Assembly: GCF_035594765.1 (NCBI RefSeq)
Contig: NC_085843.1
Span: forward strand, 206,809,971 to 206,873,970
Length of the DNA stretch: 64,000 nucleotides
Direction: 5' to 3'
DNA from: Anolis carolinensis
Taxonomy: Eukaryota
A program made the position numbers and the translations under genes. Numbering within the stretch: position 1 is the first letter of the stretch; each line of letters begins with the position of its first letter. A model generated the notes under the pieces. It searched no databases. It was not told the DNA's origin and was given only the letters and a program-made list of their open reading frames with translations. This document shows, one piece after another, positions 12,374-49,317 of the stretch.

Positions 12374-15300
12374 ATTATTATTATTAACACAACAACGTTG
12401 TATGGCACAGCAAACAAGATAGATATGCTGGATTTCGTTTCGCAAAACCACAAGTCGAACACTTCCCAAGTGTCTAGGACTGTGTGATGTATTTTCTGAT
12501 GATGTGTGCAGATCCCAGTAGGGTGGCCTTTTGCAGTTGGCAGATGGTGATTTTGTCAATGTCTATTGTTTCCAAATGCCGGCTGAGATCTTTTGGCACA
12601 GCACCCAGTGTGCCCATCACCACCGGGACCACCTGTACTGGTTTCTGCCAGAGTCTTTGAAGTTCAATCTTGAGGTCCTGATAGCGGCTGAGTTTTTCCT
12701 GTTGTTTTTCATCTATGCGACTGTCACCTGGGATGGCAACATCAATGATCCAAACCTTGTTCTTTTCCACAACTGTGATGTCTGGTGTGTTGTGTTCCAG
12801 AACTTTGTCAGTCTGGATTCGGAAATCCCACAGTATCTTTGCGTGCTCATTTTCCAATACTTTTGCAGGTTTGTGATCCCACCAGTTCTTTGCTGCTGGG
12901 AGGTGGTACTTGAGGCATAAGTTCCAATGAATCATTTGGACCACATAGTTGTGCCTCTGTTTGTAGTCTGTCTGTGCGATTTTCTTACAGCAGCTGAGGA
13001 TATGATCAATGGTTTCGTCGGTTTCCTTGCACAGTCTGCATTTTGGGTCATCAGCTGATTTTTCAATCTTGGCCTTAATTGCATTTGTTCTGATGGCTTG
13101 CTCCTGGGCTGCAAGGATCAGGCCTTCTGTCTCCTTCTTCAGGGTCCCATTCGTGAGCCAGAGCCAGGTCTTCTCCTTATCAGCTTTTCCTTCAATTTTG
13201 TCAAGGAACTTTCCATGCAGTGTTTTGTTGTGCCAGCTGTCAGCTCTAGTTTGTAGTGCGGTTTTCTTGTACTGGTTTTTGTCTGCTGTGTTTTGAGGAG
13301 TTTCTGATTTTTGACTTCAATCAAAGCAGGTTCTTCACTTTGCTTGACATATTCTGCCAGGGCATGTTCTTCTTTGACTGCTTGCTTTACTTGTAAGAGT
13401 CCTCTGCCCCCTGATCTTCTAGGCAGATATAGCCGGTCAACATCACTGCGAGGGTGCAGTGAATGATGAATGGTCATGAGTTTTCTTGTTTTTCTGTCCA
13501 AATTGTCCAGTTCCACCTGTGTCCAATTTATAATGCCAGCAGTATATCTTATGACAGGTATGGCCCAGGTGTTTATGGCCTTGATGGTGTTGCCTCCATT
13601 GAGCTTGCTTTTGAGAATTTTTCTGACCCTTTGTGTGTATTCTTTGCTGACCACAGTTTTCACATGTTCATGCTTGATGTTGTCCAGCTGTAGTATGCCC
13701 AGATATTTATAGGCCTCTGGCTGGTGAGACTTTATTGTTTGGCCATTGGGCATATTTATGCCCTCACTTTCAATGATTTTTCCCTTCTTCAATGCCACTG
13801 TCGAACATTTGTCCAAACCAAACTCCATGTTGATATCAGTGCTAAAAATTCGGACAGTGTTGGTCAGAGACTGGATTTCAGTTTCCGTTTTCCCATATAG
13901 CTTCAGGTCATCCATGTACATCAAATGTGAAATTTTGTGAGAATTCTTAGATATTTGATAGCCGAGATTTGTTTTTTGTAAGATTATTGACAGAGGGATC
14001 ATGGCAATAATGAAAAGGAGAGGGGACAATGAATCTCCCTGGAAAATTCCTCTCCTGATGTTGACAAGTCCATAGCTTTCATTTCCAACAAACAGTTCAG
14101 TTTTCCAGTGCTCCATCATGTTTTCAATGAAGGTGCCAACTGTTTTACAAATCCCGATGGCGTCCAGGCACTTGATGATCCAGCTGTGTGGGAGTGAGTC
14201 AAAGGCCTTTTTGTAGTCAATCCACGTCATGTGAAGATTAGCTTTTCGGCTCTTACAGTTCTCCAGAATCATTTTGTCAATCAATAACTGGTCTTTTGTG
14301 CCCCTGCTTTTCCGTTTGTTGCCTTTCTGTTCATCTGGCAAGATGTTTTTTTCTTCAAGATAGTCTTGAATTCTGTCAGCTATGATGCCAGTCAGTAGTT
14401 TAAACATAGTGGGCAGACACGTTATTGGCCTGTAGTTTCCTGGTGCTGCTCCTTTTGCTGGATCCTTTTGTATCAGGTATGTTCTTCCAGTTGTTAGCCA
14501 TTCACTGATACTTCCTTTCTGCAGCATCTCATTGAATTGTTGGGCCATTTTTCCATGTAAACTAATCAGATGTTTGAGCCAAAATCCATGAAGTTGATCA
14601 CTACCAGGCGATGTCCAGTTCTTGACTTTTTGCACTCGTTTGCTGATCATTTCAGTTGTTATTTCCATCCGTTCCATTTTGTTCTGTGAGAATTTTCCTT
14701 CAAACTCCTTTATCCACCCAGCGTTTTTGTTGTAGTTTTTATTATTTTCCCAAAGTTCTTTCCAGAACTTTGTTGCTGCAGTTTTCTCTGGCTTTATGGT
14801 TACTGTGTCTGTTGTTTGGTTCAGACTCTGGTAGAACCGTCTTTGGTCTGATTGAAACAGTTGATTTTGTCTGTACTGGATGATTCTGGCTTCATACCTT
14901 TCAATTTTTCTGGCTGTTGCTGTAATTTGTTCTTTCACGATTTCCAAAGCTTCTTCAATTTTTCTGGTGTTCAGCCAGTACTTTCGGATCAGGTATTGCT
15001 TGATTTTGTCATTCTTCAGTTTCCTCTCTTTCATATTTTTCAGGTTACTTGCATCTGATCTAAGTTTCTTGATTTTCAACTCTAGCCTGACCTTCCACTT
15101 TGGTTTTCCAGTCGATTTTCTTTGGGGCTGCCTTAGTTGTAGGAGCCCAAGTTCTTCTGTTACTATCACTGCTGCACTGTAGGCAAACTGGTTTGTTTGT
15201 TCAATTGATGTTATTTGGACAGTGGAGAGTGCTGCATTCACATCTTTCATGAGAGGCGCCAGGTGTCTCTTGGGCACTGTTTTTAGAGTTGGGAGCCGCT

Positions 15301-16038
15301 GTCTTATTGCATTTGCTGCAGCATGAGCCATGATCTTATCCTTGAGCTCTTGTTGTCTTGCTGTCAAGGTTCCTGGTTGTTCAACAGATGTTTCAAGTGC
15401 TGGTTCCTCAAATTCTTGCAAAAGCTCCACCCTTTCTTCTGGTTCAATCTGTTCCACCATTCCAAGTGTTGCTGGAGTCTCTGCTGCTGTCTGTGCTGTG
15501 GTCTGATGGTAATCTACTTTGCAAATTTTCTGGATTTCTTCGAGTTCAACTTCACTGAACACTTTGTTTCTGATTATGAATCTTCGTTGGTCAGCCAGTT
15601 GGGGTTCTGTTATCTGTGAGTCAGGGTACTCTTGTTTCCATAGCTGATGCATCCTTTTTTGGTAGCCACGCCTTTGAGGTTCAGATTTGTAGTAGCATTT
15701 CATAATTGTGCGGTTTTCTGGCATTGTATATTTTTGCCGCTTCTGTGACTGTTCATTTGGGTTTTGATGATTCCGTAGCCCACTTGTCGATGGATGTCCA
15801 GAATCAGCAGCATCCACCGCGGTCCTTTTTATCCTGGGCGACGACCGAGCCAGTATAGACTTCGTTTGGGTTTGATTCTCCATAATGCTAATGGGTTAGG
15901 TGCTCTTGGTTGTGCTCCTCAGCTGAGGCCTCTCTGGCTTGGTTGGACCTGCCGGTAGTTACACTACCGCCAGCACAGCCCTCAGTCATCATTGGAGCAG
16001 CTAAGCCCCCCCGCAGGTGCCACCTTGACGGGGGGGGG
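12374..16038 (-). mobile_element. Full-length R4/Dong-clade non-LTR retrotransposon (RT + restriction-like endonuclease) inserted in (TAA)n
   Basis: Single long ORF with RT and C-terminal CCHC/RLE motifs, a 155-nt 5' UTR, a short 3' UTR, and TAA repeats on both sides, as is typical of Dong/Rex6. Confidence 0.93.
12474..15883 (-). pseudogene. R4/Dong polyprotein ORF (Myb-like N-terminus, RT, CCHC, RLE), about 1136 aa if the single 1-nt frameshift at 13276-13280 is repaired
   Basis: RT motifs YRPITCL, DYKKAFDS, GIFQGDSLSPLLF, YMDD, YKYLG in the 914-aa ORF; the shifted frame continues through CRLCKETDETIDHILSCC, RHN, PDITVVEK..IIDVAIP, EKLSRY to TAG at 12474. Confidence 0.92.
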
Positions 16039-16074
16039 AATGATGATGATTATTATTATTATTATTATTATTTT

Positions 16075-16674
16075 ATTATGACACAGCAAACAAAATAGAT
16101 ATGTTGGATTTCGTATCACAAAATCACAAGTCGAACACTTCCCAAGTGTCTAGAACTGTGTGATGTATTTTCGGATGATGCGTGCAGATCCCAGTAGGGT
16201 GGCCTTTTGTAGTTGACAGATCGTAATTTTGTCAATGTCTATTGTTTCCAAATGCCGGCTGAGATCTTTTGGCACGGCACCCAGTGTGCCCATCACCACC
16301 GGGACCACCTGCACTGGTTTCTGCCAGAGTCTTTGAAATTCAATCTTGAGGTCCTGATAGCGGCTTAGTTTTTTCTGTTGTTTTTTGTCAATGCGACTGT
16401 CACCTGGGATGGCAACCTCAATGAACCAAACCTTTTTCTTTTCCACAACTGTGATGTCTGGTGTGTTGTGTTCCAGAACTTTGTCAGTCTGGATTTGGAA
16501 GTCCCACAGTATCTTTGCATGTTCATTCTCCAATACTTTTGCAGGTTTCTGGTCCCACCAGTTCTTTGCTGCTGGGAGGTGGTACTTGAGGCATAAGTTC
16601 CCTTAGTCATCATTGGAGTGGTTAAGCCCCCCCCCCCCCCACCATGACAAGGTGGCACCTGCGGGGGGGGGGGG
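16075..16674 (-). mobile_element. Internally deleted R4/Dong copy (about 75 nt of 5' end fused to about 525 nt of 3' end)
   Basis: 16075-16601 matches the RLE region and 3' UTR of the full copy; 16600-16674 matches its 5' UTR start; flanked by (TAA)n. Confidence 0.9.
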
Positions 16675-17153
16675 TATTATTATTATTATTATTATGAGGA
16701 GGAGGAGTTATATCCCACTCCTTCTTTCCCAAAGGAGACTCAGGGCCCATCCAGACAGGCCTGTCTCAGTTTTATTGTAGGCATCCAAACACCTCCAGTA
16801 AAACTGAATTAATTAAACACTAGGTAAGATCTGGGTCTTACCAAGTGTAGGTCTTGTGTGGATTGAACTCGGGAACCATGTGACGCTCCAGGAGCCCAAA
16901 AAACCAAGAGGAGACCCCCCCCCCCCAAATAACCCATCGTTTTTTAAAAAAACCTCAACTGGCTGCCATTATGTTCCTCCATTATGTTGTGCCATTATGG
17001 GCGGCTTCGGGATGGCTGCATGCCATCCCAATTGTTATCAGGATGGCATATTTGCTGTTTTTGTTTTTGTTGTTTTTTACTTGTTAACACAAGTAAAGTA
17101 ATACAAATCTCAATAATGTAATTTCACTTACATTTTCACTTGATATAACAAGC

Positions 17154-46700: not shown

Positions 46701-49317
46701 GCTGGAAGACTTGGCTATCAGACTTCTTTGTGTATTTGCACTAGACAGATTTGGTGATTTTGTTTCAGATGAAGTAAGTATCAATACTGAAAGTCTGCTG
46801 TGTCTACAGGGGCTTACTTTTGGCTTGTATTTCTACTATTCTGTTTATTGCTGTTATTGTTTTTAATTTTAGGTTGTGGCTCCAGTACGAGAGACATGCG
46901 CGCAGACTTTGGGAGTAGTACTCAAATACATGAATGAAAGCGGAGTTCATAAAACTGTGGCTATCTTGCTGAAATTACTTGCACAAGAGCAGTGGGAAGT
47001 GAGGCATGGTGGTCTGCTGGGGATAAAGTATGCACTGGCAATTCGTCAGGTATGGTTTTAAGTTTTACCAAGATGTCATAGTTCATTCCATTGTTCCAAT
47101 TATATATGGCATTATCCCATTGTGTTGAATCATATGTATGAACGTGTTAACCAAGTAAAACCAGTAGGAAGTCTTTCTTGCCTGATCACAACATTTGGGT
47201 TGCACAAGCTTATTATTTACAATTAGCTCCCCTTATCCACGGGTTCTGTATCCATAGATTTTTTCACCAACTTATTTTGATTTTTTTTAAAATTCCACAT
47301 CCATACTGTAATTCTACATAAGGGACATCATTTATGCTACACCATTGTATGTGTGGTATTCACAAAAGGGGAAAGGGTCCTGAAACAAGCTCTAGTGGAT
47401 AACAAGGGCAGACTAGTTATTTTAGTGATTTCCTCCCCTCCATTTTTCAGTAAATTCTGGAACTTCGTGTTTTTTATATATATTTTTTTAAATTCCAAAC
47501 ATACTTTCCACTAAAGTAGATTTTTGGTAACCAGCCCATTATTAATTTTGGTGTGTTTCCATCCATTTCCTCTAATCACCCACTGGATCAAGTGGGCTGA
47601 AACATTAAAGCTTCTCCCATCCTCTCATGATCCCACATTCTCCTTTTGCAAAGCAGCGACAAAGGGATAGTCATCTCAGTGGAGCTTGCAAGGTGGAATA
47701 GGTGTTAAACACTAACGCCTCTGTGATTCTGAGATCCCACTTTCATATTGTTGCTTATCTCTGGTAGTATCTATGGAAAAACAATAATTCCATTCAGGAT
47801 TGCTGGAATGCAGATGGAAACTTTTTTTTCCCTCTTCCAAGTAATCCCAAAATTTCAATGTACAGGAATAGGGAAGGTAAACTTTCACATCTTGTGTCCG
47901 AAGATACACATATGGAAAATGCATGCTCAATAATGTGATGGGGAGTAAATGTACATATATGTTGAGATGCCAAGCGTGTATGTGCACACCCCAGTGTGTT
48001 TGTGTTCTCTGGTTTCCTGGTACATGCCAGTTGTGAAGAGGTTGTGCATTCCTTGACGAAGCAGTCTCTTGTTTTTAAGAAACCTTACTTTAGATTTGCT
48101 CATTTCACTCAGCTATTTGCTGGTATTATGATAAATTGTATAAAAAGGCCATAGGGTCTACTGTACTCTTAAAAAGTTGACTTTTTCTTTTGATTTTAAG
48201 CCTACTATTTCTTGCTTTTGCAGGACTTAATTGATACTTTATTGCCAAAAGTCTTGCCTGCAATAACAGAAGGACTACAAGATCTAGATGATGACGTTCG
48301 AGCTGTTGCTGCAGCATCTTTAGTACCAGTGGTGGAAAGCCTTGTCCACCTTCAGCCAGAGAAAGTGAGTCAAAGTACATTGGCACTGATGATATAGATA
48401 TACACACACATATATGCATTGTTTGTGTTCTAAATAAAATTACAAGGACTGAAAGTTACTTTGTCTTGTGTCTGTATTTCAATTTTAGGTTCCCTTTATT
48501 CTTAATATATTGTGGGATGCACTCTTAGATCTTGATGACCTCACAGCTTCCACAAATAGCATAATGACTCTTCTGTCATCCCTTTTGACTTACTCTCAGG
48601 TCCAAAAATACAGGTAATCTAGATAGAAGCATTCTTGCCTTTTTCTTTCATAGCAGCTCAATTTTGCTTTTTGCTTGATAGGAAAGCATTCATAGTAGAT
48701 TTGCATGTTTTAGCCTACATATAATACATTTTATGGTAAATTTCAGGCATGTATGGTCTGGAAATGTAGGAGGATTTTAAAAAGGATTAAGGATGCTACG
48801 AAAGGAGCAAGATTTGATGAGGGAAAGGTTACTCAGTTTTTATGCATATATTTTAGTTCCTACTCAGGAAACCTAGCCTGAAATGTTTATGTTAACGACA
48901 AAAGATAAGATGGAATGCAATAAACAGGAGGAAAGGAAAAAGTAGGTGGTAAGATGGCTTTTGCACCTTATGTCTGGCCTTGGTATCCCAAAATAGTTCC
49001 TACTAGACAATAAGATTATAATAAAGTGCTGCTATATTATTATTGTTATTGTTATTGTTATTAGAAACATAATAAGATGAGTCCACAGCAGTCACTCTGC
49101 TGGCTGTTGCGTTGGATCACACGTCGGACACTTCCCAAGTGTCTAGGACTGTGTGATGTATCTGTGAATAATGCGTGCAGATCCCAGTAAGGTGGCCTTC
49201 TGCAACTGGCAGGTGGTAATTTTGTCAGTGCCGATTGTGTTTAAGTGCAGGCCAAGGTCTTTAGGCACTGCACCCAGTGTGCCGATCACCACTGGGACCA
49301 CCTTGACTGGCTTGTGC

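What the first reader, a model, noticed from the sequence alone, without database searches (positions are those of the whole stretch)
15913..15999. Box C/D kink-turn, snoRNA-like RNA module in the 5' UTR of the R4/Dong retrotransposon
Seen: the element strand reads UGCUCC-AAU-GAUGA-CUGAGG-gcugug-CUGGC-GGUAGU gua ACUACC-ggcagguccaaccaa-GCCAG-agagg-CCUCAG-CUGA-GGAGCA. UGCUCC/GGAGCA forms a 6-bp closing stem, followed by a 3-nt bulge. A perfect box C (AUGAUGA, 15992-15986) faces a perfect box D (CUGA, 15922-15919). Nested inside are the helices CUGAGG/CCUCAG, CUGGC/GCCAG and GGUAGU/ACUACC. The module is 87 nt long and ends 29 nt before the ORF ATG. Established: this geometry (tandem G-A, U-U, G-C) is the C/D K-turn bound by 15.5K/SNU13; related RLE elements (R2 and some R4) use structured 5' RNAs such as HDV-like ribozymes. 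Inference: this element may instead recruit host snoRNP or L7Ae-family proteins to protect, localise or translate its RNA. An alternative pairing UGUGCU/AGCACA would break the closing stem and could act as a switch. I know of no description of this, but could not search the literature.
Basis: partly seen in the sequence, partly recalled or inferred. Interest (0 to 1): 0.85.

Follow-up and report, generated by a model that had tools for sequence, protein, structure and literature searches.

The report
Kink-turn hairpin in lizard R4 leader
The 87-base hairpin with perfect snoRNA-type box C and box D is really there in this green anole R4/Dong retrotransposon. It is most likely the variable outer arm of an HDV-ribozyme-like 5' fold, a kind already known in this retrotransposon clade, rather than a free-standing snoRNA-like module.

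Summary
Window 15999-15913 (- strand) reads exactly as described and folds well (z -2.9). It is the only box C/D-type arrangement in the 64 kb.

The host is Anolis carolinensis. The element is an R4/Dong-type LINE inserted in (TAA)n.

Two other lizards carry a homologous leader, and the shared order is: C-run, AGGUGC, a 3-bp hairpin with a 7-nt loop, G-run, linker, the long hairpin, a conserved AC-N-AAG joiner, then GCACCU.
- The long-range AGGUGC/GCACCU helix shows three compensatory pair changes among the three lizards.
- The hairpin's inner helices show four.
- This is the P1-P2-P3-P4-J4/2 order of HDV-like ribozymes, which were shown experimentally for Bombyx Dong and Ascaris R4 (PMC3774820).

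The kink-turn core (3-nt bulge, tandem G.A) is kept in Anolis and Hemicordylus. The box C/D consensus is not: Hemicordylus has GAG-GAAG/CAGA, an Anolis subfamily has AAG-GAUG, and Phrynocephalus has deleted that strand.

No Rfam family matches, and self-cleavage and protein binding are untested. In the window's full copy the ribozyme-like core is inverted.

First-stage notes of this scan describe the same module on other DNA of this genome (s1-528359, s1-517372, s1-555390).

The parts
16049..16078 (-). (TAA)n target repeat between the upstream copy's 3' end and this copy's 5' end, followed by a copy-specific (CAT)4 at 16048-16039
   Evidence: All related elements also lie directly after (TAA)n.
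16030..16038 (-). C-run, the 5' strand of the terminal G/C helix (candidate P1)
   Evidence: The same C-run/G-run pair is present in copy 2 and Phrynocephalus; it is weaker in Hemicordylus.
16013..16029 (-). Inner segment of the terminal hairpin, here in the inverted ('flip') orientation. It keeps AGGUG(G)C at 16025-16019 but loses the 3-bp hairpin with its 7-nt loop.
   Evidence: It is the reverse complement of the segment in copy 2 and in the other lizards.
16006..16012 (-). G-run, the 3' strand of the terminal helix (candidate P1')
16000..16005 (-). Linker CUUAGC between the G-run and the long hairpin. C16000 would pair with the majority G at 15912 to make a 7-bp closing stem.
   Evidence: (15912 variant)
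15913..15999 (-).
   Evidence: Helix covariation against Hemicordylus is; subfamily variants are.
15904..15912 (-). Joiner with AC-N-AAG conserved in all lizards (candidate J4/2, with an invariant C at 15909)
15898..15903 (-). GCACCU, the 3' strand of the long-range helix (candidate P2') that pairs with AGGUGC upstream of the G-run
   Evidence: Acar AU GC GC UA GC CG; Pfor GC GC GC UA GC CG; Hcap AU GC GC CG AU CG
13139..15883 (-). ORF (914 aa up to a frameshift) with a reverse transcriptase domain. The CCHC and restriction-like endonuclease part continues in another frame to about 12474.
   Evidence: 97% identical to an Anolis carolinensis protein
16601..16674 (-). 5' end of the upstream, internally deleted copy in the 'flop' orientation: C-run 16674-16663, AGGUGC 16660-16655, ACC/UUGUCAU/GGU 16653-16641, G-run 16640-16627, CACUCC 16620-16615, box C 16614-16607, CUAAGG 16606-16601, then the deletion joint

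Best explanation
The 87-nt module is the enlarged, evolutionarily variable outer arm (P4) of an HDV-ribozyme-like nested pseudoknot at the 5' end of lizard R4/Dong elements.

Inferred mechanism:
- These elements sit in (TAA)n arrays, often head to tail, and are transcribed together with upstream sequence.
- The 5' fold cuts the RNA at the repeat/element junction, as shown for Bombyx Dong and Ascaris R4.
- The kink-turn near the base of P4 bends the distal arm. Being of the C/D type in Anolis, it would need an L7Ae-family protein such as SNU13 to fold.

Shown here: the sequence, the fold order, the helix covariation, and the indels confined to P4.
Inferred: self-cleavage, the kink, and any protein partner.
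For: 1. The host and element type are settled. All relatives lie in (TAA)n.
2. Homologous leaders in Phrynocephalus (L006, L007) and Hemicordylus (L008) share the order C-run, P2 5' strand, 3-bp P3 with a 7-nt L3, G-run, linker, long hairpin, AC-N-AAG joiner, P2 3' strand.
3. P2 has three pairs changed on both sides among the three lizards and none broken.
4. The P4 inner helices have four double changes and one G-C to G-U change between Anolis and Hemicordylus, with none broken.
5. The closing stem has UGCUCC/GGAGCA and CACUCC/GGAGUG versions within Anolis: copy 2, variants at 15913/15914 with similar shares, and the loose end at 15997.
6. Large changes are confined to P4, namely an 18-nt apical insertion in Anolis and a deletion of about 22 nt in Phrynocephalus, while the core is kept. 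That fits a dispensable P4.
7. PMC3774820 reports active HDV-like ribozymes cutting at the 5' junction of Dong (with a (TAA)7 leader) and of R4.
8. Contigs of two probable RNA runs carry the leader and run on upstream of it.
Against: - No Rfam ribozyme model matches either orientation, even at E<=10.
- My loose structure descriptor also hits 9-55% of shuffled leaders, so topology in one sequence proves little.
- P1 starts with C or A rather than the usual G.U wobble. L3 (UUGUCAU) lacks the CC needed for a 2-bp P1.1.
- The window's full-length copy has the core inverted and cannot form P3/L3.
- Only five sequences from three lizards were available, and the one Hemicordylus copy that covers the 5' strand is decayed (its ATG reads ACG).
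- No cleavage data exist.
Confidence: 0.5

Rival explanations
1. One reading: a snoRNA-like box C/D module that recruits SNU13 and then NOP58/NOP56/fibrillarin onto the retrotransposon RNA. This would protect its 5' side (as in snoRNA-capped long RNAs), send it to the nucleolus, or control translation, independently of any ribozyme.
For: - Perfect box C and D, a 6-7 bp terminal stem, an AAU bulge as in U4, and a U.U plus G-C stem II.
- The MFE exposes the loop.
- The motif is improbable by chance in one leader.
- C/D kink-turns fold only with protein (PMC5579392).
- The window's subfamily is closer to the C/D consensus than the AAG-GAUG subfamily or Hemicordylus.
Against: - The boxes are not conserved: Hemicordylus has GAG-GAAG/CAGA and Phrynocephalus has deleted the strand yet still spread.
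- There is no guide region, no C'/D' boxes and no snoRNA family match.
- Trimming down to a snoRNP would remove the 49-nt leader that all copies inherit.
Confidence: 0.2
2. The hairpin is a binding site for the element's own protein (like the 5' RNA of R2 that directs second-strand cleavage) or a cap-independent translation element. The kink-turn would be just its shape.
For: - Structure is conserved by covariation.
- The loop AGGUCCAACC is invariant.
- It lies 29 nt before the ATG.
- A further conserved hairpin lies just inside the ORF.
- An uncapped RNA made by self-cleavage would need such an element (discussed for L1Tc in PMC3383444).
Against: There is no direct evidence. Phrynocephalus copies lack most of the hairpin.
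Confidence: 0.15
3. No RNA function. The hairpin would be an inverted duplication made by DNA-level snap-back events, which this element clearly undergoes at its terminal hairpin. It might be a remnant of a tRNA-like head, with the box C/D match arising by chance.
For: - The terminal hairpin occurs in both orientations in the genome.
- Relatives carry tRNA-like heads at the same place, and Hemicordylus resembles one weakly (p 0.03).
- The family is young, so invariance within Anolis says little.
Against: - G-U pairs and asymmetric loops are kept.
- The long-range P2 helix covaries and cannot come from snap-back.
- Similarity to the tRNA-like heads is not significant for Anolis (p 0.2-0.7).
Confidence: 0.15

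Closest known systems
HDV-like self-cleaving ribozymes at the 5' ends of non-LTR retrotransposons (R2; Bombyx Dong; Ascaris R4; RTE; L1Tc)
   Same: Same clade, and the same position at the (TAA)n/element junction. Same order of P1, P2, P3/L3, P4 and J4/2 with a conserved C. P4 is the variable part.
   Different: No Rfam match, no G.U at the cleavage site, and an L3 without CC, so at most a 1-bp P1.1 (as reported for L1Tc, PMC3185411). P4 carries a kink-turn. Activity is untested.
Box C/D snoRNA core motif and the U4 snRNA 5' stem-loop kink-turn (bound by 15.5K/SNU13)
   Same: A terminal stem, an AAU bulge, tandem G.A pairs, U.U, G-C, a C-G pair at position -1, and a length of 87 nt.
   Different: It is embedded in a LINE leader. 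There is no guide region and there are no C'/D' boxes. The boxes are not conserved in homologues, and no evidence exists for a stable small RNA or a snoRNP.
Architectural kink-turns in riboswitches and large ribozymes (for example SAM-I; from general knowledge)
   Same: A kink-turn in a peripheral helix that could fold the arm back on the core.
   Different: Those kink-turns usually fold with metal ions alone, whereas the Anolis loop is of the protein-dependent C/D type. No docking partner has been identified.
snoRNA-headed retroposons (platypus snoRTE/PlatSINE1; PMC7245038) and snoRNA-capped long RNAs
   Same: snoRNA-type sequence joined to LINE sequence.
   Different: Those are true snoRNA copies heading non-autonomous SINEs or host lncRNAs. 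Here the motif arose inside the leader of an autonomous element.

Membership tests
Box C/D snoRNA | Box C (RUGAUGA) near the 5' end and box D (CUGA) near the 3' end, joined by a terminal stem | tested here: met
Box C/D snoRNA | Boxes conserved in homologues | tested here: not met
   Hemicordylus has GAG-GAAG/CAGA, Phrynocephalus has a deletion, and an Anolis subfamily has AAG-GAUG.
Box C/D snoRNA | Single-stranded guide region and internal C'/D' boxes | tested here: not met
   The interior is almost fully base-paired and has no C' box. Complementarity to rRNA was not examined.
Box C/D snoRNA | Match to a curated snoRNA family | tested here: not met
   The best hit is 9.8 bits against a gathering score of 38.
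Box C/D snoRNA | Accumulates as a small RNA bound by SNU13, NOP56/58 and fibrillarin | not testable with these tools
   Only contigs were available, and they cannot show RNA ends.
Kink-turn | C stem, 3-nt bulge, G1b.A1n and A2b.G2n, followed by an NC stem | tested here: met
   Anolis has AAU-GA.../...GA and Hemicordylus has GAG-GA.../...GA. The motif is absent from Phrynocephalus.
Kink-turn | Adopts the kinked shape, alone or with an L7Ae-family protein | not testable with these tools
   C/D-type loops need protein (PMC5579392).
HDV-like ribozyme | Nested double pseudoknot in the order P1-P2-P3-L3-P3'-P1'-P4-J4/2-P2' | tested here: met
   Met in copy 2 (5' half), L007, L006 and L008. Not met in the window's copy 1, whose core is inverted.
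HDV-like ribozyme | Helices supported by covariation | tested here: met
   P2 has 3 double changes and P4 has 4 or more, with none broken. Only 3 lineages were available.
HDV-like ribozyme | Catalytic C in J4/2, a 2-bp P1.1, and a G.U pair at the cleavage site | tested here: inconclusive
   An invariant C is present in AC-N-AAG. P1.1 is at most 1 bp, and P1 starts with C-G or A-U.
HDV-like ribozyme | Match to curated models or a specific descriptor | tested here: not met
   No Rfam hit. My descriptor is not specific.
HDV-like ribozyme | Self-cleavage | not testable with these tools
   Shown only for Dong and R4 in PMC3774820.
R4/Dong clade LINE | Reverse transcriptase, C-terminal CCHC plus restriction-like endonuclease, no AP endonuclease, insertion in (TAA)n | tested here: met

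The most novel reading that the evidence does not exclude
In Anolis the ribozyme-like 5' fold of an active LINE has evolved a protein-dependent box C/D kink-turn. A host snoRNP core protein (SNU13, perhaps with NOP58 and fibrillarin) would then become a cofactor that folds, stabilises or localises retrotransposon RNA. That would be the first case of a LINE borrowing the snoRNP assembly pathway.
Probability: 0.15. Interest if true: 0.85.

Novelty: new variant of a known kind. Interest (0 to 1): 0.55.

Why it matters
R4 is still active in the green anole, with 1,729 polymorphic insertions (PMC5389967). If the fold cleaves, it extends the Dong/R4 ribozyme to vertebrates and shows how its outer arm is rebuilt lineage by lineage. 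If the kink-turn binds SNU13, it links retrotransposon RNA processing to snoRNP assembly. The related tRNA-like heads suggest that the 5' processing module of this clade is exchangeable.

Tried and rejected
- **Hammerhead and SECIS readings.** Rejected by eye: box C has A where the hammerhead needs C and there is no GAAA, and the ORF has no in-frame UGA.
- **UGUGCU/AGCACA switch.** Not conserved.
- **Pol III transcription from the tRNA-like heads.** T4 runs are not significantly depleted, and L031 has T4 runs right after its head.
- **Derivation of the hairpin from a tRNA-like head.** Only weak similarity, p 0.03 to 0.7.
- **Rfam on both orientations.** Nothing.
- **ARAGORN on L001-L005 (which include L002, the head with the best Rfam tRNA score).** Nothing.
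- **Searches for more squamate copies.**
  - N-terminal protein queries gave only Phrynocephalus and Hemicordylus.
  - Metagenome loci were distant, at 34-59%.
  - Viral contigs gave none.
  - L034 and L035 are 5'-truncated.
- **Linkage of paired variants in Anolis.** It could not be read because Logan contigs are short and only one read-laying run was allowed.
- **Consensus.** No consensus of the element was built.

Full report
**What is in the window.**
- The 87 nt fold to -38 kcal/mol with z -2.92.
- The MFE leaves a 6-nt/3-nt internal loop between the 6-bp closing stem and the next helix, which is the geometry of a box C/D kink-turn.
- A pattern scan finds this arrangement once in 64 kb. 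Random sequence gives about 0.5 per Mb per strand.
- So the motif is not expected by chance in one 165-nt leader, although a genome holds thousands of chance matches.

**The element.**
- The ORF that follows (15883-13139) has a reverse transcriptase domain and is 97% identical to an Anolis carolinensis protein.
- Its C-terminal CCHC and restriction-like endonuclease part continues in another frame.
- The element lies between (TAA)n repeats.
- Directly upstream sits a second, internally deleted copy at 16695-16077.
- R4 is recently active in this species (PMC5389967).

**Variation within Anolis.** Contigs of two DNA runs show thousands of near-identical copies.
- Variants at 5% or more inside the module are mostly CpG transitions. 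None falls in box C or box D, but in so young a family that says little.
- A15913G and C15914U on the element strand occur at matching shares (10-27%) and turn GGAGCA into GGAGUG.
- Copy 2 and a class of loose ends at 15997 carry CACUCC on the other strand. That would keep all six pairs of the closing stem.
- G15980A and C15928U, two non-CpG changes at 9-20% of depth, fall on the two sides of one pair.
- Loose ends at 15985 and 15979 reveal a subfamily with AAG-GAUG in place of AAU-GAUGA.
- Linkage between these variants could not be read from short contigs.

**Homologues.** Protein searches and contig look-ups gave related Dong-type elements, all inserted in (TAA)n.
- Two Phrynocephalus forsythii copies (L006, L007) and one Hemicordylus capensis copy (L008) have a leader homologous to the anole one.
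- A second Hemicordylus copy, L034, is 5'-truncated.
- Segment by segment they share: C-run, AGGUGC-type strand, ACC/GGU hairpin with a 7-nt loop, G-run, CUU-linker, long hairpin closed by UGCUC(C)/GGAGC, a joiner with AC-N-AAG, then a GCACCU-type strand.

**Covariation between lizards.**

| Helix | Anolis | Phrynocephalus | Hemicordylus |
|---|---|---|---|
| Long-range helix (P2) | AU GC GC UA GC CG | GC GC GC UA GC CG | AU GC GC CG AU CG |
| Hairpin, inner helix b | CG UA GC AU GC GC | deleted | GC UA GU AU GC AU |
| Hairpin, inner helix c | CG UA GC GC CG | deleted | CG CG AU GC |

- P2 has three pairs changed on both sides and none broken.
- The two inner helices of the hairpin have four double changes and none broken.
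- The RNA structure is therefore under selection, and the long-range helix makes it a pseudoknot.

**What the fold resembles.**
- The order P1 (C/G-runs), P2, P3/L3, P1', P4, J4/2, P2' is that of HDV-like ribozymes.
- PMC3774820 shows that Bombyx Dong, tested with a (TAA)7 leader, and Ascaris R4 carry active ribozymes of this kind that cut at the 5' junction.
- The large changes are confined to it: an 18-nt apical hairpin only in Anolis, and a deletion of about 22 nt in Phrynocephalus that removes the bulged strand. The core is kept. That fits a peripheral arm.

**Caveats on the ribozyme reading.**
- Rfam finds no ribozyme in either orientation.
- My loose descriptor also fits 9-55% of shuffled leaders.
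- P1 lacks the G.U wobble, and L3 allows at most a 1-bp P1.1.
- Nothing has been assayed.
- In the window's full copy the inner segment 16029-16013 is the reverse complement of that in copy 2 and the other lizards. This copy therefore keeps P4 but cannot form P3/L3.

**The kink-turn itself.**
- Hemicordylus has GCUCU-GAG-GAAG on the bulged strand and CAGA-GGAGC opposite.
- That still gives a 3-nt bulge, G.A and A.G, then A.A in place of U.U, a G-C pair and the helix.
- The kink-turn core is therefore kept in two lineages, while the box C/D words are not.
- With about 70% identity between the leaders, keeping four bases is weak evidence on its own.
- C/D-type kink-turns do not fold with metal ions and need 15.5K/SNU13 (PMC5579392). 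A host protein partner in Anolis therefore remains a live idea, but no more than that.

**More distant relatives.** Elements with 51-57% protein identity (L002, L030, L031, perhaps L001) have no such fold. They start with a tRNA-like sequence right after (TAA)n.
- Rfam tRNA scores are 31.4 bits (above the gathering score of 29), 19.4 and 16.6.
- A Pol III reading is not supported.
- Descent of the lizard hairpin from such a head is at best weakly supported.

**Literature.** Searches found HDV-like, twister and hammerhead ribozymes in LINEs and snoRNA-headed SINEs. They found no kink-turn or box C/D module in a LINE leader and no tRNA-like head on R4/Dong elements.

**Other notes of this scan.** Notes on other parts of this genome describe the same kink-turn module and, separately, an HDV-like ribozyme at R4 5' ends. 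The ribozyme notes made me re-test that reading.

**Verdict.** The structure is real and selected. It is best read as the P4 arm of an HDV-like 5' fold with a kink-turn, a new variant of a known kind. snoRNP recruitment is unproven.

Noticed in passing
L002:1175-1247; L030:32-101; L031:3659-3731; perhaps L001:28-215: Dong-type LINEs with 51-57% protein identity to the anole element begin with a tRNA-like sequence directly after (TAA)n. Rfam tRNA scores are 31.4, 19.4 and 16.6 bits, and A and B boxes are visible. This may be an RNase P/Z-processed replacement of the 5' ribozyme. I found no description of it in the papers searched.
   Followed up: partly
window 16013-16029 versus 16641-16662 (- strand): The inner part of the terminal C-run/G-run hairpin is reverse-complemented between the two copies, and contigs show both orientations in the genome (loose ends at 16012). 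Only one orientation allows the P3/L3 hairpin. This would fit hairpin-primed second-strand synthesis.
   Followed up: partly
window 15834-15853 (- strand) and the matching ORF starts in L002, L030, L031, L001, L006-L008 and L034: About 20 nt into the ORF, the DNA is far better conserved than the protein elsewhere and can form a hairpin: ACCGG...CCGGGU in relatives and CUGG...CCAG in Anolis, a two-sided change. It may be an RNA element inside the coding region.
   Followed up: no
window 16039-16048 (- strand): A copy-specific (CAT)4 between (TAA)n and the C-run is complementary to box C. In the MFE of the whole leader it pairs with 15993-15986 and competes with the closing stem.
   Followed up: no
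window 16077-16695 (- strand): The upstream R4 copy keeps only its first ~95 nt and its last ~525 nt, joined at about 16600. It is head to tail with the full copy across a (TAA)n repeat.
   Followed up: yes
window 13139-13150 (- strand): The ORF of the full copy is frameshifted just before the CCHC/endonuclease part, so this copy is not intact.
   Followed up: partly
window 49118-49317: A further 200-nt fragment, 83% identical to the R4 3' region.
   Followed up: no
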